64,000 nucleotides of DNA, taken from positions 3,100,001-3,164,000 of the forward strand of contig CM035354.1 of NCBI GenBank assembly GCA_020137815.1, written 5' to 3'. The notes below the pieces were generated by a model. That model had not been told where the DNA came from. It saw only the letters and a list, made by a program, of their open reading frames with translations, and ran no database searches. This document shows positions 4,281 through 27,379 of the stretch, piece by piece. Within the stretch, counting starts at the first letter, position 1, and every line of letters starts with the position of its first letter. Position numbers and translations under genes: made by a program. Source of the stretch: Hormiphora californensis (lineage: Eukaryota; Animalia; Ctenophora).

Positions 4281-6206
4281 TTTTCCACGATCAGAGTTCA
4301 GTGAGGGACGGGGGAGGAACCCTTGCACGTGGAAATGGCGAGAAGGAGAGAGAGAGGAAGAGAGAGAGAAAGATGGACCAAGAATGTAAATAGCTGTATT
4401 TGTGTTTCCAAAAAAGTGAGATGTAGTAGAGCAAAAACAAGAGGTCCCTGAGTTGTCCGAATAAATTGTGTCAAGAGTGTTTCTTCGATCGATTATACTA
4501 ATTGTGTCTGAGTTTGAGGCTCCTCCTTTCAGGGGGTGACTATTTGTGAGTCTGACTTTACCAATTGAGTCATGATGATGACAGAGAGAGAGACAGAGAT
4601 ACCAGTTATATAATGTGCCGATATGAACCAAATTTGTTTGAGAAATGATACCAATGCCCAATATTAGTGGGCGAGAGAGAGGAGGCTTCCAGGTAGTGTC
4701 AAGGCAAAACCATCTGTGATGATGATGACGATTGAGAGTGAGAACACCCAAAAAAATATTAAAATTAGAAAATGCAATGTTTTTTGTAAACTTGGGAAAT
4801 AAATAAATGGGAATATAGACTTTTTAAATGTGTCCAGAAAAGTTCCTTTACCCATTAAATTATTTATTCCATGTTCTAATTGCCTATTTTTACTACCGTA
4901 TCTGATGAGTTTCACTTTTCTTCCGCTCCTCTGACACTCCAAGCCATCCAGTTCACATTTGGATTGACATGTTTCTCTCTTTCTGAGAAAGATCTGATGT
5001 GGCATATCTTTCTCTGTTGTTATATAATATCCATGTCATCAAACTGGTGCAAGATGATACTAATGAACAGTACACAGTGACTCAAATGTGAACCACTGGA
5101 CGGCTTGGTGTATACCTCCCCCGCCCCCCCCCCCCCCCTGTATACCTCCACCCCTTGGTGACGCGGCCACCCCTACACTAGCCGCGGCAGCGTGGCTAAA
5201 CGAAGCCCGCGATGGGATCACCAACTCCACCCCCCCCCCCCCCCTGTAAACCTCACCCGTCGACGGGCCGTCTTGTATACCTCCACCCCAAGATATCAAG
5301 GTATCTTTCCAGATCCATCATTCTGACACACATAATTGCTCCAGTTCCCACATGCTTGTCTCTGTAACTCTTGTACTACTACTAGTTCTCCACGATTATT
5401 TAACTAAAACAACACATTACCTCACTCACACAGGGTAGAAGATTCGGGAAAAGAGATTGGAAGATGGGGAAGGATTCGATTACCGTGCACACGATGAAGA
5501 GAGGAGAGAGGAGAACTGGAGAAATGTTTACAGCAGCGTTGTAGCTCTCCGTACTTCTCCACAGCAGATGCTGTAAGTGCTGTCTGTATATGTGTACACA
5601 ATGTTGTTTTGTTCAGTTAATGTTCTCAATTTGACGGGCCTTGTAATTGGTCAATCTAATTTAGAATTACCCAGATATCAGATAGATAAGTAGATTCTAT
5701 CTTAAAAACTACTATATTATATGACTATCTAGTCTTGATTGGTGTTTTGTATGTATCCTCCCACCCCTTAGGGCCCTTACTCAACAACTTCTTTATCAAG
5801 ATGACCCTAATTGGGCCCATAGAGTATTGGCATGGCCCTATTCTCATTGATTTCAAATGCACGCGAGAACAGCGGTAAGTTGTTGAGTTACTCAGCAAGC
5901 GGTCGGAGCATTGGCCTGACAGTTCCCTAGTCTGTCTGGTGAGTGGTGTCGCTGATCCGATTCGATCTGACGGATCACTGTCGCTATAACTGACTCAAAA
6001 CAGGGTCTGGAGCCGCGAGACAGCCCCCAAATTATTTTACTCCTCCTCCTCCTCCTCTACTTCAATAATTTACTTTTAAATTTATGTGCCTTTTTTACTT
6101 TTCCATTTAGTCAATTTTCCCTGTGCTCCCTACCTTTCTCATGATGACGTGCGGGCCCACGCACACGCGTGTGTCTGCAGTAATATTTGCCAGGCAATCT
6201 TCCCAC

Positions 6207-6271
<65 letters not shown>

Positions 6272-6330
6272 ATCTCTCTCTCACTCTCCTTCCCTCTATC
6301 TCTCTCTCTTTATATCTCTCTCCCACTACC
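6207..6330. repeat. (CT)n/(GA)n microsatellite; similar tracts at ~8160-8420, 9020-9240, 9850-9977, 10930-11090, 39380-39650, 51195-51310, 53540-53586
   Basis: Pure and degenerate dinucleotide runs visible directly. Confidence 0.95.
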
Positions 6331-7042
6331 TCGCAAGGTCCGCAACTTTTTTAATGATTGTCTGCATGATAGGAAGCTCTCTCTCTCTCGGCAACATTTG
6401 ACAGCAAGTAGTAGCTGGGCACACTTGTCCCTTTTGTTTCAAATCGTGTAGCCGTTTTTTATTTGTGTTTGCTGTTGCCCGGACTTTTACTAAAAGTCCG
6501 GGCAACAAAAAGCGAAGAAGGGACAGATGTACCTAAACTAGAGCTAAAAGTTTTAGTTTACAGTTCTGTCCTTTCTTCGCGTTCACTCAAAAATTATTAT
6601 CGGGTCGGTTATGAACTTTTTGGGATCTTTTGAACCCATCCGGCAACCCCAATACAGTTTTGAGCTGTGAGTCGTTATTGCATTGGATATACCTTCATTG
6701 TGTAAAATTAAAATGGATAGCGATGTAGTTTGAAAGTGTTATAAGTGGGTCCCGGCGACTGAGAGACTCTTTATTCCTCAAACGAAAGAGAGAGAAGTCG
6801 GAGTGGAAGTAGTGTGAGAGAGGAAGGAGAGTGAGAAGTGGGGGGAGAGTGAGAGAATAATAAGTAGAGTGAGAGAGGAAGGAGAGAAGGAGAAGGAGAG
6901 AAGAGAAGATGCATCTCTGAGCCGAAGAGATAGTTAGTGAGAGGGCCCCTCCCCTTTGTTGTTTGGAATGGTATTCGATTTCAGGCTCCCTTTGTCTTTT
7001 TTTGTGTCTGTGTGATGACCACCTTAGCTCTGCACAGATGTT

Positions 7043-7335
7043 ATAGGGGCAATATAGGGGAGAGAGAGGGGCAATATAGGGGGAGAGAGAGGGGCAATAT
7101 AGGGGAGAGAGAGAGAGAGGGGCAATATAGGGGAGAGAAAGAGGGGCAATATAGGGGGAGAGGAGAAAGAGGGGCAATATAGGGGGAGAGAGCTCTCGAG
7201 AGAGGGGCAATGATATAGGGGGAGAAAGAGAGCGAGGGGCAATGATATAGGGGGAGAGAGAGGGGCAATGATATATGGGGAGAAAAAGAGAGAGAGGGGC
7301 AATGATATAGGGGGAGAAAGAGGGGCAATATAGCT
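7043..7335. repeat. Purine-rich minisatellite, ~22-30 bp unit aggggcaat(g)atataggggagagag, about 11 copies
   Basis: Direct reading; produces spurious PYIAPLS-repeat ORFs on the minus strand. Confidence 0.9.
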
Positions 7336-9099
7336 AGGGAGAGGGAGAGGTACTATGAGGACAATACAGGAGGACCGCTGCAGATGTGTGCTTTTACACA
7401 CACTCCGCTTTTCGGCTAGACTTCGACCCCCCTCTTTACTTGTTCTAACCCTCCTATAATACATGTAGGGAGAAAGCTTTTGAGAGGGTCGAACAAGGCA
7501 CCCCTGTACACCAAAAGTAGACAATTAACCACCCACCCTCCGCTGATGCTGCCTACGTGTTTTGCCTCATTTCTTTCCCAAGTGTGCCTCTTTAAGCCTC
7601 AATATCCCACATTGCATGTGTAACTCAGTATCTGTGTTTGTGTACTTGTGCGTGCATCTATTTAGACTCTGGTGATATATTGAGAGGTATTAAGATCATG
7701 TGATAATGATATGTACCCACTTTTTAGGATATTTTGTGGGATATGATGAGGGTCGTGTGGGTTACATCTTATTGCATATTATACCTACATGTGTGTGTGA
7801 TTTGAATGTGATGACACGTGTAAAATACTAGTCGCTCAAGCGATCTGACTAGAATATAGATAACCTCACTTTCCCCTACGCTCTATCGCTGCCCCTCTTG
7901 ATAGACAAGAGCATCGTACAGTCCGTAATGCGAATTTCAGATCTCCTATCTATCTAACACCTCCAGTATCTCAAGTCTCAGTTCCTCTTACGGGCAATTG
8001 TCAGCGAGTCTTTCTAGCTCAGGGCTCTGTAAGCCACGCGCCCATAATATGCATGATAATATTATGTGGACTTGTACTACTACATGCAATGCGGTACCTT
8101 CTTGAAACGCGGTCCTTATTATTCTCTCTGAGAGGGGAGGAGTGCGGGAAGAGGGGAGAGAGCTAGGGAAGCAGGAGAGAGAGGGAGAGCGAGAGAGAGA
8201 GAGAAGCAGCAGAGGAAAGCCGGAGATAGACTAAGAGGAGAGTAGAGATTGAGAAAGGGAGAGAAGGAGAAAAGAAGAGAGAAGGAGAAGAAGAGCAGAT
8301 GAGAGGAGCGAAGAACGAAGGAGAGAGAGGGGCGAGGAGAGCAGAGGAGAGAGAGAGTAGAGAGAGAAGAGAGACGAGAGAGAGAGAGAGAGAGATAGGA
8401 GATGATGAGAGAGAGAGTGACTGAGATATCCGCATCTAGACTCTCTCATCGACAGATGACTCTCGATAAGCCTCTATCTCCGCATATGCCTACTCTGCAT
8501 CCTCTGCTTATTCTCCTCTCTTATCTCTTCTAAATTTTTTCCCAATCATAGCAGTATCAATGCAGAGTCAGTCTGTTGTACACTGCACCTCTCAATTAAA
8601 CTCTCGGGGCACGATCTACTAGCATAGTTATCAGTATGTCAACACTGTTGGGAAGCATAATTATCCATCCCTGTATTATATGTTTTTATATTAAATATAT
8701 CCCTCTTCCCTTGCTTTCAGCCCTCCCTCTCCCCTTGTAGCCCGCAACTTTATGTCTCTCCGTTTGGTCCCCATTTTGTAGACGATGATTGCTGATGTTT
8801 CTTAGGATCGAGTTAGGACTGTTCCTGGAAGCACTGATGATTGTTAAATTAGGGAGTTAATTGGGAGAATGATTTCTCATGATTTGCCTCTATTTATTTC
8901 TTGATGGTTATCTCTCCATCTATCTCACTCTCTCACCCTGGCGAATCAGCTGTGTCTCTCGTCAAGCGCGTATTGGATCGTCGTCGCATATCCGCCTACA
9001 CGCATGACCAATGTAGGCGAGAAGATGGAAGAGAGAGAGAGAGATGAGAGAGGGGAGAGAGTCGAGAGAGAGAGTGGATGAGAGATGAAGAGAGAGGAG

Positions 9100-9134
<35 letters not shown>

Positions 9135-9868
9135 GACGGTGAGAGGAGTACAGCGAGAGAGATCATTGGGGGTAGATGTAGTCGAGTGAGGGAAGGAGAG
9201 TGTAAGAGAGATGTGAGAGTGAGAGTGATGTGAGATGAAGGGCGTCTTCTCTCTGCTACTCAACACCCAGCACACATATCGAGTATGCTATAAAATGTAT
9301 GTGTTTGCCATCTCGCTATTACTTTTTTACATAAAATGTGAGGGTTGAATATTTGAACATTATCAATCTATAGAATCGGGAAGTACCTATATTGTGCCGT
9401 GCTTGTAAGAACCTAACTTACAAACACGGCACGACTTACAGTAAATTCTTACCGATCTTTTATCTCTTATGTTTTGAGGATGAGATTTGATGCTTGGATC
9501 CCCCTGGCCTTGTTAAGTAACCCTTTTTTAGTGCCCCTTTTTTTAGTGCCACACACACCTCCCAACTACCTAGCTGCCTTCACTTTCGACGTGATGACGT
9601 CACAAGCACCACACCTCTCTCTGACTAGATTTCAGATTTGTAGACAAGGTGCAGGTGTCTCACTCTCTCAGTCTACTGAGAATCTCAGCAGTAATGTACA
9701 CCACCACCAAGTAGCTGCCGGGGCGGTGCTGCTTTGTTAATTTTAATGGTAGCTCGTTATGTGTCCTGTGTCCTGTTTGTTAGCTATGGCAGGAGTCATG
9801 ACGAGTACATCACTCCCTACCGCGTGTGTGTATCACATTACGGCGGCTGAGAGGGAGAGAGAGAGAGG

Positions 9869-9979
<111 letters not shown>

Positions 9980-11016
9980 ATGAGTTACAGCGATGATTTG
10001 CCATCCCACACAGTGTGAGTCACACCTGTGTGTGTGGGCACCTTTGCAACGTGTAGTGATTCTAGAGTCCTCTATGTCTCCCCATGGCCCATCCCTCTTG
10101 TATTTATGACTGTCCATAACTGCATCTTGCCATCATTTGACAGATCTGTGAATGATTCACATCTGTCAGATGCACAGTGAATCCCTCCTGATGCTCCATG
10201 TGTGTAATATTTTGCCGCTGTCACAGGACAGTCTCTGTTGATAGAAGCCATGTCACACTTGTGTGATAAGGGAGATGAATTCTTTCGTTTTCTCGGCTCT
10301 GGGGGGACCTGCGTGTTTCCTCCCCCCCCCCCCCCCCATTTTCTCCCTTTTTTATTCGCCGCTCATCCTAATGGGATAGGATTCCTAATATTCTCTGTTT
10401 AGTACCTCGGTAAGGTACCCTTACTGTAGGTTCATCGGTACGGAGTGGCTTAGAACTTAGAATCGTGGATTTAAGCACATTAGGCTTACCTAGTGATTGG
10501 AAGAGACCTACCCTTTGACTTTGATATCTGGATGCATCCTCTCTTTCCCCATCCTTTCTACTTTGTGACATGTGTTAAATTTACACGCTTTTGAATCGAA
10601 AACATCACCTAACAGCAATCCTTATTTGTCGATTGACGTCTGCCTGTTTTGCCGTCAAGATCAGCTTCATTCGCTTCATTCTACCATTCTACCATTCTAC
10701 CTTTCAAAATGTCAGAGTTCAGGGTGACTGTTCTACTTCCTCCTCTCCTTCACTGTGTCCTGCCATTGGTCGCAGCTTGGGAGTTGGCGCTGTTATCGCG
10801 TCATTGGGTCATATGTTGAGCTAACATATATATGTTGAGAGAGAGAGAGTGTGTTGTTTTCTCAAGTGTTTATACTGCGCAGTGGGTGCTTGGTGATATT
10901 CTCTCTCAGTCGATCTCTCGAGATAAGAGAAGAGCAGAGAGAGAGAAGCGAGAGAGCGAGGAGAGGAGAGAAGAGCGTAGAGAGAGAGAGAGAGAAGAGC
11001 CTCTCTCTATCTCTCT

Positions 11017-11093
<77 letters not shown>

Positions 11094-11481
11094 CTGTAAT
11101 TCCCTGCTTACTATCAGCGTCACTGTCTTGATTGTTTGTGATACTGATACAACGTGTGATGTACAACACAGTTCAAAGACTCGGACCGGTGAACACTATT
11201 ACACTGTATAGTGGTAGTCTACAGCAGTGTAATTTGTCAGTCTACACTTGGAATGATCATTCTTGATCCGCTCTAGATCCGAGTATCAACCGCCAACTTG
11301 CCTTGTAGTAGAGGGGCTGAAGCACCGGGAGAGCTTGTATTGCTCTATATGTGACGTGTGTGTCAACTTGCCTTGCTTGACCCACTTTCTCCGAAAACGG
11401 TTAGAACGTAGCAAACCTCCAACTCGTCTTCCTTTGTTTTTTTGGCCAAGTCGATACTTTTGGTCCGTGATATCCAGCTCT

Positions 11482-12055: not shown

Positions 12056-12591
12056 AGCTCTAGAGACAAATATTTGTTGTTCAAAACACGATCAATTTGA
12101 AACTCCCTTCTCCGCGTCGCCTTGACTCCCTCCCACCTTTATATATGCAATGTGTAATGGCATAAAATGTTCCGTGTGTTTTTACTGCATGAGGCACAAT
12201 ATCCATTTACCAAAGCAATATTAGAGTAAACTGTGAGGGAGGGAGAAACTGTGAGGGAGGGAGAGAAAAAGTAGGGAATCAAGGAGAGAAAGGGCGAGTT
12301 TTAAATCCTCCTTTTTTGGTATTTAAGGGCTCCTTTGCTACTCCATTTTCAGTTCTTACTTCTGTTTTTAATATGGCTCAAAGCTAATAACAGTGGTTCT
12401 CTACTTCTTATTTTATCCGTTTAAATCCTACATGCTTGCCAGGTGGAGAAGTTAAGTCACGCACTAGCTGCTGTACATTTACTTCCAATGATAAATGATA
12501 ATGTAACTTGACTCATGATCCCTGCAGTTTAATGACACCATGACCTGAAAGGACTAGACAGCTACCAGTAGCCGGGAGACTATAAAACGCC

Positions 12592-15500
12592 ATGATGGAT
12601 AGTAAGACGATGGATCAGCTGGATGCCTGGAGGAGAAAGAGGACTCTGTCCAGTGCCCGGGGTATTAGTACCATTAGGAGAAATGAGACAAAGTGGGTTC
12701 AGATCCAACATAGGACATTCGCCAAGTGGGTCTCACAGCACACAGGTGGGTGGAGTGTTTATGGTACGGTACTACATGTGTTATTAGAGCCTAGCTATAT
12801 TATGTACAAGCTAGCTATAGCTGGCAAAAAACCATATATTAGATTTCGATAGGATTTCCTCGTACACGCAATGCGGGTATGAGGGAATCCACATACGTCA
12901 TACGGGTCCTCAGTCCCGTATGTTCAACTTCCAACCCGCCACCCTGCAGGAGAGAACGTAGAAAACCTGACGATAGATTTCACGAGTGGGGTGTTATTTC
13001 TCAAGCTGATGGAGGCCCTGTCTGGACAGAAAGTCCGGAGGTACAACTGTTATCCCCAGTCCATTACCCAGAAATGTGACAATGTACAGTTGGCCCTTCA
13101 GATCTGTGCCACTGAGGAAGTGAGGTGAGATATAATGAGTGAATAAGGGTGTAAGGATGAAAATTTGGTGTGTGAATGTGATAGCACCCTGGTGTATTTC
13201 CAAGGCCTTGGATGTAGTTTTACTAACTAACCACAGGAATGTATTCAAAATGTAGTTAATTTCAGATTGATCAACATCGGCGCCTCGGATATTGCCAATG
13301 GAAACTTGAAACTCATCCTGGGTCTGGTGTGGTCTCTCATTCAACGGTATCACCTCATATCGGTAGGCATGTGGTTTGAGAAGAGTTTTTTTATGAAACT
13401 CCAATTAATTTTAAACTTGAGCTCAAGTTTGAGAATCAAAACGGGTTCTTGATCTCAACTGAGATCAAGACGAAGTAGAATTAACGGGCCCGGGGCCATT
13501 ATGTTAGAACAAGATGAATTAACCCCATTATGTTTCAGTTATACGAGAGTAGTAAAAGATCCAGTAGCATTGGATCTAAGGATGAAAACTTCCGAGCCCA
13601 GTTAATTAAAGGCCTTAATAGGATCTTGGGTAAGGCCACAGGTGTGTTCGTGTGCAACCTGTTCGATTTCTAAATATGGTGTTGTTGGATGACCAAATAT
13701 GGTCATTGTGTGTGAATGTGTGGTCTCAGTTGATTTCTATTGGTTGTCAAGTTCATGGATGAAGTTCTCAGAAATATATATTGATTGTCTTCTTATGAAT
13801 TATAATGAGACAGTTCTCAGAGCTGCACTAATTCCAAAAAGTTCGCAGAGGCATGTTATATTTATAGCCACCCAAAAAGACAAGTTAAATATTAATTGCA
13901 CCCTTCATTTATTGACTTCTCGGAAAGACTAACCCCCCCACATTTCAGATAATGTGAAGTTTAAAGGTTAGTAACCTGAAGAACGATTGGAAAGATGGGA
14001 TGGCTCTAACTGCCTCTTGTAACCTACCTAGCACCTGTCTTTAACGTTGATTTCATGAGTATTGGTGAGTAATGGGGTGATCTTCTTCTTCCTCTTTTCA
14101 AACAATTTCCTATTCTACAGCTACTGTTTTATGAGTTCCCACATTCCCTCTCGTTACTTGTCCATTGTCCAACTCCCAAAATCCTCCCCTTCCCTTTCTA
14201 CCCTTCAAACTACTTTACTTACCCCCCCCCCCTCTCTCTCCAGAGCGTGGCCAGTACAAGGCGGCTACGGGTGCAGCGATGGATGCGGCAGAGGTCCACC
14301 TTAGAATACCAAGACTCATGTCTGCTGAGGATTTTACCAGGTAGGGTATTGGGGATCGCCCGTTCGTAACCCTGCCATTATTAACCACTTAGCAACCCAT
14401 TAGTAACTCATCCCCTAACTCATCCATCATATTCATAGTATAACATGTCATGGGGTAAAGATATTCCTTCTTTTATCAAATCTTGGTATATTTAGATCTG
14501 TTGAGATCATATTCAGTGATGTTGCATAATCTGACACTGAGTAGAAACATTGGAATGGAATGTGGTATCAGATTTTACATTCCCCACCACCACTGATCCA
14601 GTTATCATTCATCAAATCAACGGACAACCGTTCTCAATCTCATATTTCTGATTTCACCATCTCATCTTCAATTCTTCCATCTTCAATTCTTCCAACCCGG
14701 ATACAATTTAGATATGCCCATCTGACTCTTATAATCAGATGATTGACTTCCACCCCCTCCCTCTTTCAGTGACGACATTGACGAATTGAGCATGATAACC
14801 TATCTGTCCTATTTCCTGAATCCCGAGTTGAAGGGAGTCAGGGACCGGTACCTCCGTGATAATCCCCATTATGTTCCCCTTTACCGACCCTACATTGAAA
14901 CCGGGGGATCGGGGGACAACGGGAAGAAGAGCCCAATTAAAAAACTATTTTCATCGTACAAAGAAAAGCTGAAGAAACCATCAAAAGATCAAATTCAGCA
15001 GCAACAGAACCAACAACAATCGAGTACGGTGCCTTTTGGATACAAGGAGCCCTACAGGTTACCCACCCAGATGGAGGAGGAAGAGGAAGCTGTGACGTCA
15101 CAACCCACGGTGACGTCACCATCACAACATGACGTCATTACACGGCAATCCAGTGGTGACGTCAGTATCAAACATCATAAACCGGTGAAAAGGAGATCAA
15201 AAACACCCGAGAAACAGCACCGGAGTAGCTCTCTGACCACATCAATTGGGGAGGTGCCTCCTTTCTCCCCGCCTACCACGCACGGTGGTGAAGACCCCCT
15301 TATGTCACGTGACCACCAGATGACGTCACAGAATGTCTCCATGGAGACGAATCCCAGGACACCTCAGAACGTTTCCTTGGAGACAAATCCCGAGAACCTC
15401 TCAGAGCGATCAGGAGGATGTAGAAGAGGATGTCAGTGAAATGGAGCGGGATTTGATCCTTGAACAAATTCTCAACGCTGCTAGTAGTGATGATGAGGGA

Positions 15501-15623
15501 GAACAGCAACAGAGACGACCACACAGATCACGTGCTAGCACCACTGTGATGAGGAGACCCAGTGGGACCACCGCCACTGGGGTTAAACCTCAGATATCAG
15601 ATAGTGTTCCAGACAGGAGTTGA
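12592..15623 (+). CDS. Filamin/alpha-actinin-type tandem calponin-homology (CH1-CH2) actin-binding domain plus low-complexity linker; exons 12592-12745, 12950-13124, 13266-13362, 13539-13629, 13949-14064, 14244-14340, 14770-onward
   Basis: CH1 motifs KWVQIQHRTFAKWV and LINIGASDIANGNLKLILGLVWSLIQRY; CH2 motifs NDWKDGMAL and HLRIPRLMSAEDFTSDDIDELSMITYLSYF. Needs correction of +1 insertions near 13965, 14015 and 15391. Confidence 0.8.
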
Positions 15624-16963
15624 TGCCATTTTTCCGGGATCATGAGATTATGGCAGAGTACAAGTTGTTGTGTAACAATGTTAGCTCGGGGGTTTATGTG
15701 GCGCCATCACCACGGACATTACAGGTACTACAATCAATCTTTAGTGGAGCGAATGTCTTTATGTTTGATTACTTAATACTTTAGGACCTAAGTTTAGATG
15801 AACCTACATGCTTATTGCTTTTTTATTGTTTCAACCCTAATATCCAATACTCCTGTGCAGGTATGGAATGGAGTTATATTTATCAAGATCGGCCTCTTTG
15901 CAGACGGATGCTTCAAGTTCAACCTCCTTATACCAGATGATTTCCCGTACAGTAGACCCGCTATCAAGTTCCTTACCCCCGTCTTTCATCCGCAAGTAAA
16001 GGAGCAATGGAGAACTAAACCTGGTCAAGGCATTCCCAACTTGGACCCCACGGAAAGACAGGATCTGGTGAGTAGATCATTAATTTCTGGGGGAAATGTT
16101 CAAATGGTAGACTTGTGATGTGGAGTTGTTGTCGTTTTGGTTTTAAAACTCTTATTTGAATCCGATAACGTGCAGTCTCGTGGCTGCTCCCTCTTCCCCA
16201 GTTTTAACATTACACGCTACTGCAGTTGAAAGCAGGTGACTGTTTCTAGGCTCTTGAAAATACAATTTCCGTCTTTCTAGCATGTCTCCCATTCCGACTT
16301 CCCTCTCCGATTCCTCCCCAGTCCTTATCTAACACCCGATCCCTTCTCTCTAACACCATTTCCCTCCATTCGAACACCCTCTAACACCCTCCCACTCCCT
16401 CTCTATTCCATAAACCCCTCTCGAACACCCTCTCTATTCTCTAATACCCTCTCCAGTCTCCATACCAACTTACAGTTACAAAAAAAGAACCCGGGTATAA
16501 CACTCCCCCCACTCCCAGGCACGTATTACGATACACTAAGAGGTGCTTCTTCTCCGTTAATACTTTGGATTCTGTGAACTGTGTCGCAGCTGCTGCTATT
16601 CAGGATTCAATTGACACATTCAAAACACACGCCAGACAATGCGTTCACGAGTCTATAAGGTAAGGGGAAGCTCTAGACAGAGAGAGGAGAGAGTTCGAAT
16701 CAGTCGATGTTACAAGGTTTTTATGTGTACTTGTAGTAGAAGTTCTTTACTTTTTAGTATCCGACTTCTTGATAAACCCATTTTAGCTCCAACATCCCTC
16801 TCTCTCTCCTGACAGGTTAAACTTCGAGGAGCCTCCTGAAGACGGGGGAGGGAACTTGTTTGGATGTAAACTTCTTAACGATACTGAAGTGTCGATATTA
16901 AAGGACAAATTAGTCACGGGGGCCATGGAAAACAGACACGACTACGAATCATTATTCCAGTGA
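15623..16963 (+). CDS. AKTIP: AKT-interacting protein / Fused Toes (catalytically inactive UEV domain); exons ~15623-15724, 15861-16067, 16519-16659, 16816-16963; probably the C-terminal half of the CH-CH gene
   Basis: Reads FFRDHEIMAEYKLL...SGVYVAPS...VWNGVIFIKIGLFADGCFKFNLLIPDDFP...PVFHPQV..GELNLVKAFPTW...IWHVLRYTKRCF, colinear with AKTIP (GVYVQPS, WFGVIFIRHGLY, PVFHPLV, GELDV, IWQVL). No E2 catalytic Cys. One +1 indel near 16001. Confidence 0.85.
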
Positions 16964-17838
16964 ATAGATCTTTTTACTTCTTGCTTTTTGTTCATTTTAT
17001 AGGGTCTAAAAAATGTTTCAAGCCGTTTACCAATCAAATAATGATCTCTCGGCATGGGACGTGACACATCTAAACCATTGTCGGCCCTTCTCTAATTTTC
17101 TACTCTTCTGGAATCCCAGGCCCAATTCGGCACAGTGCAGAGATTTGTCTCCTGAAAGCAGAAAGTTGAAACAGGAAAGTTTTCTACCGACTTGAGTTAT
17201 AGCTTCAGACTGATTTTTGTGTGTATTTGAATTGTATGTAGAGAGAGGCTGTCTAGTTTCTAGGCAGGGTGTGTGTGTGTATGTGTAAAATTTAGTGCGC
17301 TTTTTGTACAGTTTGTAGTGAGGTATATTCTGTTACTTTTTTTTCTCATGTTGATTTTCAGTTATAATTTACTGACCCCCTTTTCGAAATATCCGTGTAT
17401 TTTCTCTGCTGGCAACGGGCCAGGTGTGTCTCGTGACGTGTGGAGCGCTTTTCAGCGCAGAATCACTGCACTACAGTCGGTGCGCGCGGTTACTGATTTT
17501 ACAGGTTATCGCGTGCTGCCAAAATGAATCTTTGCGCTACTTTTCACGTCAAGATTGTGTTTGGCGGCCGCGCCTGCTCACATTTCTAGAACTGGCACTA
17601 CCGGCCTTGGAATGAACAACTTTCACACACCGGACCCCTGAAGCATTTGGTCCCCTGTGTTTTAACTTCCCTTTTCCACAGCAGGGAGGAAAGAAATAAC
17701 ACGCAGCATGTAACAAGGTGGATCAAAAGCGAGAACTCATCAACAATTTGAGTATGAATAACTTAGAAACCATGATAACATCACTACACACAAAACATCT
17801 AATATTACTCTCAGGGTTTTATTGTGTGTGTGCTTTGT

Positions 17839-24005
<6,167 letters not shown>

Positions 24006-24206
24006 GTTGTTACGGTAACACACTGGTACCAGTAACCCTAAATTATAGAGTGTTTAGGTGGTGGATAGGTGGTTAGGTGGTCAGGGAGTAATTTGGAGTA
24101 CACAAAACGAAAACCAAGGACTGTTATGTACTACCAAAATAAAGGAATTAAAACATGTAAAATATATATTTTTAAAAAAGAAATTAAAATTATCCTCTCT
24201 GATCGT

Positions 24207-26212: not shown

Positions 26213-27379
26213 TCACTTGTCTCGAAAGTCTACATCTTCCACACTGACTGGGACAACCCTTCTCTTGGTTCCCCGAAGCGCAACAAGAGTTGATCTTAAC
26301 AAACTGAATCGTGTCTTTTCTCGGATGAAGGACATGGTTTCAGCGTAACTCTCCTTGTGCCTGTCACAGATCTTCCTGGCCGCTCGCTCCAAAACCTTCC
26401 CTACTTCTCCGGCAAAACCTCCCGACGTGGAGAATACGAGGGGCGTGAAGGAACCCTGCTCCACTTCTTGCACCCTTCGCATATAGGCAAGTTTCTTCTG
26501 ATTTTGGTGCTGTTTATACAGGTTCGTGATGGGCATCTTCAGGTAGGATGGGGCATTAGGATGGAAAACCCGTACATCCATGAAACTGGTCTGCATGTCA
26601 GACCATAAGCCACGACAGACTATGTCCATTCGTGCTTCAGCTTTGATATTTGCACTGATTGGCAGGTTGAATCCGTCACAGGGCAACATTGGCTGTTCAG
26701 TGTTAACGGGTTTAAATCCCGCATACCGAAGGATATCGGCTAAGGTATCCCGAAGGTGGTCATGTCTCCACATATCAAAGCCTCCAACCTTGCAGATCAA
26801 GGCGTGGTCACTGGTGTTTTGTGCCCCACAGCCGCATTTCCCTATCAGGTCCGGGAAGTGGAAGCCGTATCTGAGCCGAATGGCATCGACAAACTCAACC
26901 TGGTTGAGCTCATGGCCCAGTTTCTGCAGCGGTCGAGCAGTTAGCCAACTAGAAGCACCGGGTTCGGAGCACAGCTCCATCGCACGCTGTGTCTTCATAT
27001 CAAGTACTGCAAAGATATCTGCACGTTCCGTTGCATGCCTCTCATCAGTGGCGTCGGCACACTTCTTCTTCAACTTTCCGCTTTTCATCTCGGCATCCAT
27101 GATGTTATTTGGACAGTCCTCTTCCGCCAGGATAAGAGACACTAGTGGTCCGGTAGCAAAACGGGAATTATTGTATTCTTGATTAGCCGTTTGTACCGGA
27201 TTTTCCAATGGCATACCTCCCATCTTGACGGGGAGTGCTAGGATCCTCCTCTCAATGTCCGAGATATGCTTTCCCACAAATAGGGGTATCAGCTTGTGCC
27301 TCAGGATGTCTTCCATAAACAAGTGCCCTATATCAGGTAGTGTTCGCTGCAGGTACGACCACTTCATTTTTAAACCCAA
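26213..27379 (-). mobile_element. 5'-truncated CRE-like non-LTR retrotransposon (post-RT region, CCHC finger, restriction-like endonuclease)
   Basis: GASSWL, CGCG...HALIC..GG, RHD, ARMDI, FMDVRVFHPNAPS, KKLAY..RV..VEQGSFTPLVFSTSGG: a PD-(D/E)xK RLE domain typical of CRE-clade elements. Confidence 0.85.

What the first reader, a model, noticed from the sequence alone, without database searches (positions are those of the whole stretch)
12592..16963. Apparent fusion of a filamin-type actin-binding domain (CH1-CH2) to AKTIP/FTS
Seen: a complete CH1-CH2 tandem with no filamin Ig or spectrin repeats runs through a ~280-aa disordered linker straight into a full AKTIP-type UEV domain on the same strand, with no intergenic gap. 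Established: AKTIP/FTS is normally a stand-alone UEV protein in the FTS-Hook-FHIP dynein cargo-adaptor complex, and tandem CH domains bind F-actin. Inference: the fusion could tether FHF/dynein cargo machinery to actin, an architecture I do not recognise. At the junction the linker-frame stop TGA (15621-15623) overlaps the ATG of MPFFRDHE (15623-15625). So this is either one protein with a 1-nt assembly deletion (e.g. gtt-cc[c]-aga) or two cistrons with a TGATG stop-start overlap.
Basis: partly seen in the sequence, partly recalled or inferred. Interest (0 to 1): 0.82.

Follow-up and report, generated by a model that had tools for sequence, protein, structure and literature searches.

The report
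Comb-jelly actin-binding AKTIP fusion gene
This comb-jelly gene joins an actin-filament-binding module to AKTIP/FTS, a subunit of a dynein cargo adaptor; the fusion is real and is kept as one protein in several other comb jellies, but the copy in this assembly carries five one-base frame breaks that are either local assembly errors or recent decay.

Summary
Window 12592-16963 (+) is one 10-exon gene. It encodes CH1-CH2 (closest to filamin and alpha-actinin actin-binding domains), a linker of about 265 aa, and an AKTIP/FTS-type inactive E2 (UEV) domain.

The CH2 end, the linker and the first 38 AKTIP residues lie in a single exon (14770-15724). The architecture is conserved:
- Two full-length single ORFs from other species have CH+CH+UQ_con and nothing else (P0155, 854 aa; L011, 742 aa, transcript-like). 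P0155 aligns to the window end to end.
- Four more genomic ORFs (P0001, P0002, P0159, P0160) read straight from CH2 into AKTIP.

The ATG at 15623 is an internal, non-conserved residue, so the two-cistron reading is rejected.

This copy has five frame breaks of one base each: about 13960, about 14015, within 15324-15436, within 15605-15613, and within 15996-16006. All splice sites and both ends are intact, and the neighbouring aconitase gene is clean. I put local assembly error at about 55% and real recent decay at about 38%; reads are needed to decide.

The genome also has an intact, intronless, stand-alone AKTIP on another contig, plus Hook and FHIP candidates. [quoted passage not shown] I found no paper describing this architecture.

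The parts
12592..12745 (+). Exon 1: start codon (ATG 12592 or 12595), basic N-terminus and start of CH1
   Evidence: 84% identical to residues 1-51 of the full-length orthologue P0155. Donor GTGGGT.
12950..13124 (+). Exon 2: CH1 core
   Evidence: Pfam CH E 4.8e-6, profile positions 23-73. Aligns to P0155 residues 51-108.
13266..13362 (+). Exon 3: CH1 C-terminal helix
   Evidence: Pfam CH E 9.8e-4, profile positions 82-108.
13539..13629 (+). Exon 4: inter-CH segment and first CH2 helix
   Evidence: Aligns in part to the P0155/L011 inter-CH region. AG/GT splice sites.
13949..14064 (+). Exon 5: CH2 core, with two +1 frame breaks (about 13960 in a T-run, about 14015)
   Evidence: tblastn of P0155 gives three pieces in three frames. 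They are collinear and leave no amino-acid gap. Pfam CH E 0.019 on the middle piece.
14244..14340 (+). Exon 6: CH2 (ERGQYKAATGAAMDAAEVHLRIPRLMSAEDFT)
   Evidence: Aligns to P0155 residues 221-252.
14770..15724 (+). Exon 7: last CH2 helix (DELSMITYLSYFL), a linker of about 265 aa with conserved short motifs, and the first 38 residues of the AKTIP homology (RQELMPFFRDHE...RTLQ). It has two frame breaks, one within 15324-15436 (+1) and one within 15605-15613 (-1). TGA 15621-23 overlaps ATG 15623-25.
   Evidence: Alignment A2 shows conserved motifs on both sides of each break. Orthologous genomic ORFs P0001, P0002, P0159 and P0160 are uninterrupted over the whole stretch.
15861..16067 (+). Exon 8: UEV core, with a +1 frame break within 15996-16006
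   Evidence: Pfam UQ_con E 4.3e-10. P0012, the same exon from a close relative, is intact and reads QVRENGELNL where the window shifts frame.
16519..16659 (+). Exon 9: C-terminal helices of the UEV domain
   Evidence: Aligns to P0155 residues 763-808.
16816..16963 (+). Exon 10: C-terminal tail (DGGGNLF..., helix KLLNDTEVSILKDKL) and stop codon
   Evidence: Aligns to the C-terminus of P0155 and ends at the same position (...SLFQ* versus ...VIFQ*).

Best explanation
The locus is this comb jelly's orthologue of a gene conserved in a clade I take for ctenophores. The gene encodes one polypeptide of about 725 aa. It has an N-terminal tandem-CH actin-binding domain, a mostly disordered linker with conserved short motifs, and a C-terminal AKTIP/FTS catalytically dead E2 (UEV) domain with its C-terminal helix. 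I take the five one-base frame breaks to be local consensus errors of a long-read assembly, so the animal probably makes the intact protein. Probable function (inferred, not shown): the UEV end joins Hook and FHIP in an FHF-type dynein adaptor, as AKTIP does in other animals. The CH-CH end binds F-actin, so that FHF-bound cargo or the adaptor itself is anchored at, or handed over from, actin-rich structures. A second, stand-alone AKTIP would keep the ordinary role. Confidence by layer: single fused gene by descent about 0.95; breaks are artefacts about 0.55; actin-FHF tether about 0.3-0.35.
For: Architecture:
- P0155 (854 aa) has CH x2 (E 1.2e-28) plus UQ_con (E 3.1e-17) in one ORF and aligns to all ten window exons.
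- L011 carries a 742-aa intron-free ORF of the same design, flanked by 485 and 494 nt of untranslated sequence.
- P0001, P0002, P0159 and P0160 read without a stop from the CH2 helix into the UEV domain. P0159 and P0160 lie on contigs of 0.5 and 1.9 Mb.

Domain identity:
- The orthologue's ABD matches the filamin-B ABD over residues 31-255 (E 1e-32) and alpha-actinin (about 1e-29).
- Its C-terminus matches human AKTIP in the FHF structure 8QAT (E 1.6e-31), against 4.7e-14 for the best active E2. Leu replaces the active-site residue.

Artefact reading:
- All five lesions are single-base. Four are insertions, and all sit in or next to 2-3 nt runs.
- They fall within about 2 kb.
- All 18 splice dinucleotides, the start and the stop are intact, and there is no substitution-type nonsense codon in about 725 codons.
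- Linker motifs are conserved on both sides of each break.
- The assembly this genome appears to be was built with wtdbg2 from PacBio CLR reads, gap-filled with long reads and polished with Pilon, at 3.2% heterozygosity (PMC8527503).

Function:
- A Hook candidate keeps the FTS-binding motif as EERMVLSAWYE, and there is an FHIP (PF10257) hit over the family cut-off.
- The FHF interfaces of FTS are described in PMC11996680.
Against: - The assembly is not generally error-prone in coding DNA. The adjacent aconitase gene (about 780 codons, 9 exons), a 293-codon ORF and the paralogous AKTIP (222 codons) have no frameshift. Five in about 1.3 kb of coding sequence therefore needs a special local cause that I could not demonstrate.
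- An intact paralogue exists that could make this copy dispensable.
- No read, transcript or protein from this species was available. A search able to find a full-length product found none.
- No experiment links the ABD or the UEV of this protein to actin or Hook.
Confidence: 0.55

Rival explanations
1. Same conserved fusion gene by descent, but truly broken here. It would be a recent unitary pseudogene, or a null allele of the sequenced individual, tolerated because the intronless stand-alone AKTIP on contig C7 covers the essential role.
For: - There are five frameshifts in 2.18 kb of coding sequence, while neighbouring genes have none.
- An intact paralogue is present.
- The species has very high indel polymorphism. 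Five indels could therefore accrue with few substitutions, and the lack of nonsense substitutions is weak evidence.
- The window's branch is the longest in three-way comparisons (0.18-0.19 against 0.07-0.12). This is equally expected if the other two species are closer kin.
Against: - All lesions are exactly 1 nt and four of five are insertions. Natural indels are usually deletion-biased and vary in size (general knowledge).
- Every splice site, the start and the stop are intact.
- Conserved motifs are kept in every frame piece.
- Exon 8 differs from the intact copy of a close relative at only 3 of about 66 residues, at least one of them changed on the relative's side.
- The gene is kept intact in at least five other sequences.
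Confidence: 0.38
2. There are two cistrons. A CH-CH-linker protein ends at TGA 15621-23, and a separate AKTIP starts at the overlapping ATG 15623. This would work by re-initiation or by an independent spliced-leader mRNA using the AG at about 15611.
For: - The TGATG overlap is present, and TTCCAG lies 10 nt upstream.
- Spliced-leader trans-splicing is common in this group (PMC8527503).
Against: - In six orthologous sequences the ORF runs through this point, with R or T where the window has Met.
- The AKTIP frame is homologous upstream of the ATG: RQEL in the window against SEL or AEL in relatives and paralogues.
- The upstream frame is itself broken three times, and the downstream AKTIP part is broken in exon 8. 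Neither 'cistron' is intact as assembled.
Confidence: 0.04
3. The frame changes are decoded in vivo by programmed ribosomal frameshifting or RNA editing.
For: Four of the five shifts go in the same (+1) direction.
Against: - The five sites share no slippery or stop-codon context.
- Orthologues need no recoding at the same positions.
- Neighbouring genes show nothing of the kind.
Confidence: 0.01

Closest known systems
AKTIP / FTS (Ft1; Drosophila Pendolino), the UEV subunit of the FTS-Hook-FHIP dynein cargo adaptor (PDB 8QAT chain D)
   Same: - The C-terminal 220 aa of the orthologue match human AKTIP at E 1.6e-31, far better than any active E2.
- The active-site Cys is absent (Leu in its place).
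- A C-terminal tail with a helix follows the UEV.
- Hook with the SAWY motif and FHIP are present in the genome.
   Different: - Known AKTIPs are stand-alone proteins of about 220-300 aa with a short disordered N-terminus. Here that N-terminus is replaced by about 500 aa, a tandem-CH domain plus linker.
- None of the other long AKTIP relatives tested carries CH.
- The C-terminal tail is shorter than the human 'belt'.
Tandem-CH actin-binding domains of filamin, alpha-actinin, plectin and spectrin
   Same: CH1 and CH2 align over their whole length to solved ABDs: filamin-B 1e-32, filamin-A 2.5e-31, alpha-actinin about 1e-29, plectin about 1e-26.
   Different: - There are no filamin Ig repeats, spectrin repeats or EF hands, so it belongs to none of those families.
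- The lead of filamin over alpha-actinin is small.
- A search of the own genome with exon 2 (CH1 core) found no other copy at E <= 0.001.
Spectraplakins (MACF1/ACF7, Shot): an N-terminal ABD coupled to a microtubule-system module
   Same: The design logic is the same. A tandem-CH actin binder at one end of a long flexible protein is joined to a module of the microtubule transport or anchoring system at the other end.
   Different: - The microtubule-side module there is a GAR/EB1-binding tail that touches microtubules directly. Here it is a subunit of a dynein adaptor.
- The two share no homology outside the ABD.
- This is an analogy only, from general knowledge, and was not tested.

Membership tests
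AKTIP/FTS (inactive E2, UEV) | UBC/UEV fold recognised by the UQ_con profile | tested here: met
   Window exon 8 gives PF00179 at E 4.3e-10. Full-length orthologue P0155 gives E 3.1e-17.
AKTIP/FTS (inactive E2, UEV) | Closer to AKTIP than to catalytically active E2 enzymes | tested here: met
   Orthologue C-terminus: AKTIP (8QAT_D) 1.6e-31 against UBE2A 4.7e-14. Paralogue: 1.3e-35 against 1.1e-14. Window UEV pieces are 72-74% identical to the orthologues.
AKTIP/FTS (inactive E2, UEV) | No catalytic cysteine after the HPN-like motif | tested here: met
   The window reads FHPQV..NGELNLVKAF. In the alignment to UBE2A, the orthologue has Leu at the active-site column.
AKTIP/FTS (inactive E2, UEV) | Binds the Hook C-terminal coiled coil and FHIP | not testable with these tools
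   Only the partner genes could be checked: a Hook candidate with EERMVLSAWYE and an FHIP PF10257 hit of 37 bits, over the cut-off.
AKTIP/FTS (inactive E2, UEV) | Stand-alone architecture (UEV with only short disordered flanks) | tested here: not met
   About 500 aa of CH-CH plus linker precede the UEV in one ORF in P0155 and L011. The window's other AKTIP (L002, 222 aa) does meet this feature.
Tandem-CH actin-binding domain (ABD) | Two CH domains in tandem, of type 1 then type 2, alignable to solved ABDs | tested here: met
   PF00307 matches in two stretches in P0155. There is a full-length match to filamin and alpha-actinin ABDs. CH hits fall in window exons 2, 3 and 5.
Tandem-CH actin-binding domain (ABD) | Binds F-actin | not testable with these tools
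   Needs co-sedimentation or imaging.
Filamin | Filamin Ig-like repeats (PF00630) after the ABD | tested here: not met
   P0155 has only CH and UQ_con. The real filamin hit P0161 carries PF00630 and is only 31% identical.
Overlapping-cistron (stop-start) gene pair | Conserved stop and start codons at the junction, each cistron intact | tested here: not met
   Orthologues read through with R or T at the Met position. Both halves are frame-broken in the window.

The most novel reading that the evidence does not exclude
Ctenophores keep, beside an ordinary AKTIP, a dedicated ABD-AKTIP fusion that physically couples the FTS-Hook-FHIP dynein adaptor to actin filaments. As a 'Rosetta-stone' fusion it would point to an unrecognised functional link between FHF and filamin/actinin-type actin structures in animals generally, for example capture or release of endosomes at the cortex, or actin-to-microtubule cargo hand-over.
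Probability: 0.3. Interest if true: 0.7.

Novelty: new variant of a known kind. Interest (0 to 1): 0.55.

Why it matters
AKTIP/FTS is known only as a small stand-alone subunit of a dynein cargo adaptor. A lineage-wide fusion to a canonical actin-binding domain is a natural experiment. It suggests that this adaptor can be wired directly to the actin cytoskeleton. It also gives a compact, testable construct: ABD, linker motifs and UEV.

It shows gene duplication with division of labour as well, with one fused, intron-bearing copy and one intronless stand-alone copy, in a lineage I take for ctenophores.

In practical terms, the locus is a flag for this reference assembly. Either a roughly 2-kb stretch is poorly polished, or a conserved gene has just died in this species.

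Tried and rejected
- Word search with the 222-aa exon-7 piece found one distant orthologue only (P0157) and nothing from a near relative.
- A search with full-length P0155, able to catch a product of about 725 aa from this species, found none. The indels could therefore not be checked against transcripts.
- AlphaFold2 on the L011 ORF with a 9-row alignment gave mean pLDDT 46. I judged it unusable and made no fold search. Only its secondary-structure outline agrees with the domain plan.
- Three-taxon branch lengths cannot separate decay from phylogenetic distance.
- Homopolymer and N content show nothing special around the locus.
- Searches of the own genome found no second copy of the CH or linker part that could be an intact haplotig.
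- Two literature searches (AKTIP + calponin homology; AKTIP + ctenophore) gave no relevant paper.
- The FHIP 'stop inside' flag proved to be an intron tail, not a lesion.
- Exons and frame pieces were searched separately by reference.
- Nothing in the window looks human.
Full report
**What is there.** The window is G000:C5:3100001-3164000 of a 110.69-Mb, 45-record genome.
- Its size and record count fit the published Hormiphora californensis assembly, 110.6 Mb in 44 scaffolds (PMC8527503).
- This identification is an inference. I did not verify it by sequence. Nothing in the window resembles human DNA.

Reading 12400-17100 in three frames and aligning a full-length relative gives a 10-exon gene on the + strand:

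| Exon | Coordinates |
|---|---|
| E1 | 12592-12745 |
| E2 | 12950-13124 |
| E3 | 13266-13362 |
| E4 | 13539-13629 |
| E5 | 13949-14064 |
| E6 | 14244-14340 |
| E7 | 14770-15724 |
| E8 | 15861-16067 |
| E9 | 16519-16659 |
| E10 | 16816-16963 |

All nine introns are GT...AG and 136-451 nt long.

**Domains.**
- Exon by exon, Pfam finds CH in E2, E3 and E5 and UQ_con in E8.
- E7 holds the last CH2 helix (DELSMITYLSYFL), a linker of about 265 aa and the first 38 residues of the AKTIP homology (RQELMPFFRDHEIMAEYKLLCNNVSSGVYVAPSPRTLQ).

**Frame breaks.** The coding sequence changes frame five times:
1. +1 at about 13960, in GTTTAAAGG.
2. +1 at about 14015, in GCCTCTT.
3. +1 somewhere in 15324-15436.
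4. -1 in 15605-15613, just before the AKTIP homology.
5. +1 in 15996-16006, in GTAAAGGAGC, inside the UEV core.

Apart from these there is no in-frame stop in about 725 codons. The start and the stop lie where the orthologues have theirs. If each break is treated as a single-base indel, all exon phases fit.

**The fusion is conserved.** I searched 1.84 billion representative proteins with the genome's second AKTIP (see below).
- The two best hits have 295-380 residues in front of the UEV.
- P0001 and P0002 are open from the CH2 helix, through the linker, into AKTIP.
- A member of the P0002 cluster, P0155 (854 aa), is a complete single ORF. It has CH x2 (E 1.2e-28) and UQ_con (E 3.1e-17) and no other domain.
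- P0155 aligns with every exon of the window. E1 is 84% identical.
- A metagenome scan returned L011, a 3.2-kb intron-free contig. It has 485 nt of leader, a 742-aa ORF of the same architecture and 494 nt of trailer, so it looks like a transcript.
- A word search with P0155 added P0159 and P0160. These are genomic ORFs on contigs of 0.54 and 1.93 Mb that again read from CH2 into the UEV.
- P0157 is a further exon-7 orthologue.
- P0012 is exon 8 of a close relative. It differs at only 3 of about 66 comparable residues and is intact (QVRENGELNL) exactly where the window shifts frame.
- Among the five other AKTIP relatives with room for a tandem CH domain before or after the UEV, none has CH.
- The only other CH hit to P0155 is a true filamin at 31% identity.

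**The junction.**
- All orthologues read ..(S/A/T)EL(R/T)PFFRDHE.., and the stand-alone paralogues read SELEPFFRDHE and TELQPFFRDHE.
- The window reads RQELMPFFRDHE in the AKTIP frame from 15611.
- The Met at 15623 is therefore an ordinary internal residue, and homology runs upstream of it.
- The AKTIP half also has its own frameshift in E8.

Together these points dispose of the two-cistron reading.

**A second AKTIP.**
- G000:C7 (L002 1138..1806, - strand) holds an intact, intronless 222-aa AKTIP. It is 74% identical in the UEV exon. It matches human AKTIP in the FHF structure 8QAT at E 1.3e-35.
- Another species expresses its counterpart as a 217-aa ORF on 1-kb contigs (L012, L013).
- In a maximum-likelihood tree the fused and stand-alone forms make one clade (100/100), apart from 27 other AKTIPs. 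The fused forms make a clade of their own (100/99).
- The duplication is therefore lineage-specific. Which form is older was not resolved.

**Error or decay?**

*For assembly error:*
- All five lesions are exactly one base.
- Four of the five are insertions.
- All sit in or next to short runs.
- All fall within about 2 kb.
- Splice sites and both ends are untouched.
- The conserved linker motifs survive in every frame piece: VR..YL...P.YVPLY.PYIE, KSPIKKLFSSYKEKLKK, YKEPY, I(K/R)HHK, VS..ERD.ILEQI.NA and EL.PFFRDHE.
- The likely source assembly was built by wtdbg2 from PacBio CLR reads, had its gaps filled with long reads, and was polished by Pilon in a genome with 3.2% heterozygosity. Local unpolished patches are plausible in such an assembly.

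*For real decay:*
- The assembly is clean next door. Aconitase (about 780 codons in 9 exons, 24053-17842, - strand), a 293-codon ORF and the paralogue have no frameshift.
- A paralogue could buffer the loss of this copy.
- Indel polymorphism is unusually high in this species.
- Branch-length comparison is uninformative.

I put error at about 55%, real lesions at about 38%, and other readings at about 5%. Only reads can settle it.

**How it probably works (inference).**
- The orthologue's first 255 residues align end to end with solved actin-binding domains: filamin-B 1e-32, filamin-A 2.5e-31 and alpha-actinin about 1e-29.
- The last 220 residues align with AKTIP, and Leu replaces the E2 active-site residue.
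- In the human FHF complex, the dead E2 domain of FTS packs on HOOK3 coiled-coil 4. A C-terminal FTS helix in a 'belt' binds the other face of the coiled coil and docks on FHIP. The HOOK motif involved is EEKxxxSAWYN (PMC11996680).
- This genome has a Hook candidate reading EERMVLSAWYE and an FHIP hit above the Pfam cut-off.
- The fused protein keeps a conserved C-terminal helix (KLLNDT.....KDK).

The simplest model has two ends. The UEV end sits in an FHF-type adaptor. The ABD, on a flexible arm of about 265 aa with conserved docking motifs, holds that adaptor or its cargo on F-actin. None of this is tested.

**Comparison and novelty.**
- The gene is an AKTIP by its UEV and carries a filamin/actinin-type ABD.
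- It fails the stand-alone architecture of AKTIP, and it fails the Ig repeats that define filamin.
- It is best called a new domain architecture of known parts, conserved in a clade I take for ctenophores.
- Two full-text searches found no description of it.

**Limits.**
- The species behind the related sequences are unnamed, so 'ctenophores' rests on their high similarity to this genome.
- The AlphaFold model was too poor to use (pLDDT 46).

Noticed in passing
G000:C7, L002 1138-1806 (- strand): An intact, intronless, stand-alone AKTIP paralogue (222 aa). The fused copy's AKTIP part has three introns, so a retrocopy origin of the stand-alone gene is possible.
   Followed up: partly
window 15093-15328: Five perfect TGACGTCA palindromes (CRE-like) lie inside the linker-coding part of exon 7, four of them within 72 nt. 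The whole 64-kb window has seven against about one expected. This could be a peptide repeat (VTS/DVS) or an intragenic regulatory cluster.
   Followed up: no
window 15725-15860: The 136-nt intron between exons 7 and 8 is absent from the genomic ORFs of four other species (P0001, P0002, P0159, P0160). The close relative that gave P0012 seems to share it. This points to lineage-specific intron gain or loss.
   Followed up: partly
L016 about 5966-5373 (- strand; G000:C4:6035372-6035965): In the Hook candidate, the open frame with the FTS-binding motif EERMVLSAWYE runs on into about 190 aa of tandem PHHHPPSPPPSLTTTL-like repeats. This may be intron sequence or an unusual C-terminal extension.
   Followed up: no
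window 17842-24053 (- strand): A mitochondrial-type aconitase gene with 9 exons, fully open, starts 880 bp after the stop of the fusion gene in tail-to-tail orientation. I used it as the control for assembly quality.
   Followed up: partly
window 26216-26998 (- strand): A 261-aa ORF (MKTQRAMELCSEPGASSWLTARP...) that looks like a mobile-element protein.
   Followed up: no
window 6100-11200; L002 320-830: Long (CT)n/(GA)n dinucleotide tracts give LSLSLS/RERERE pseudo-ORFs upstream of the gene. Similar tracts lie beside the paralogue.
   Followed up: no
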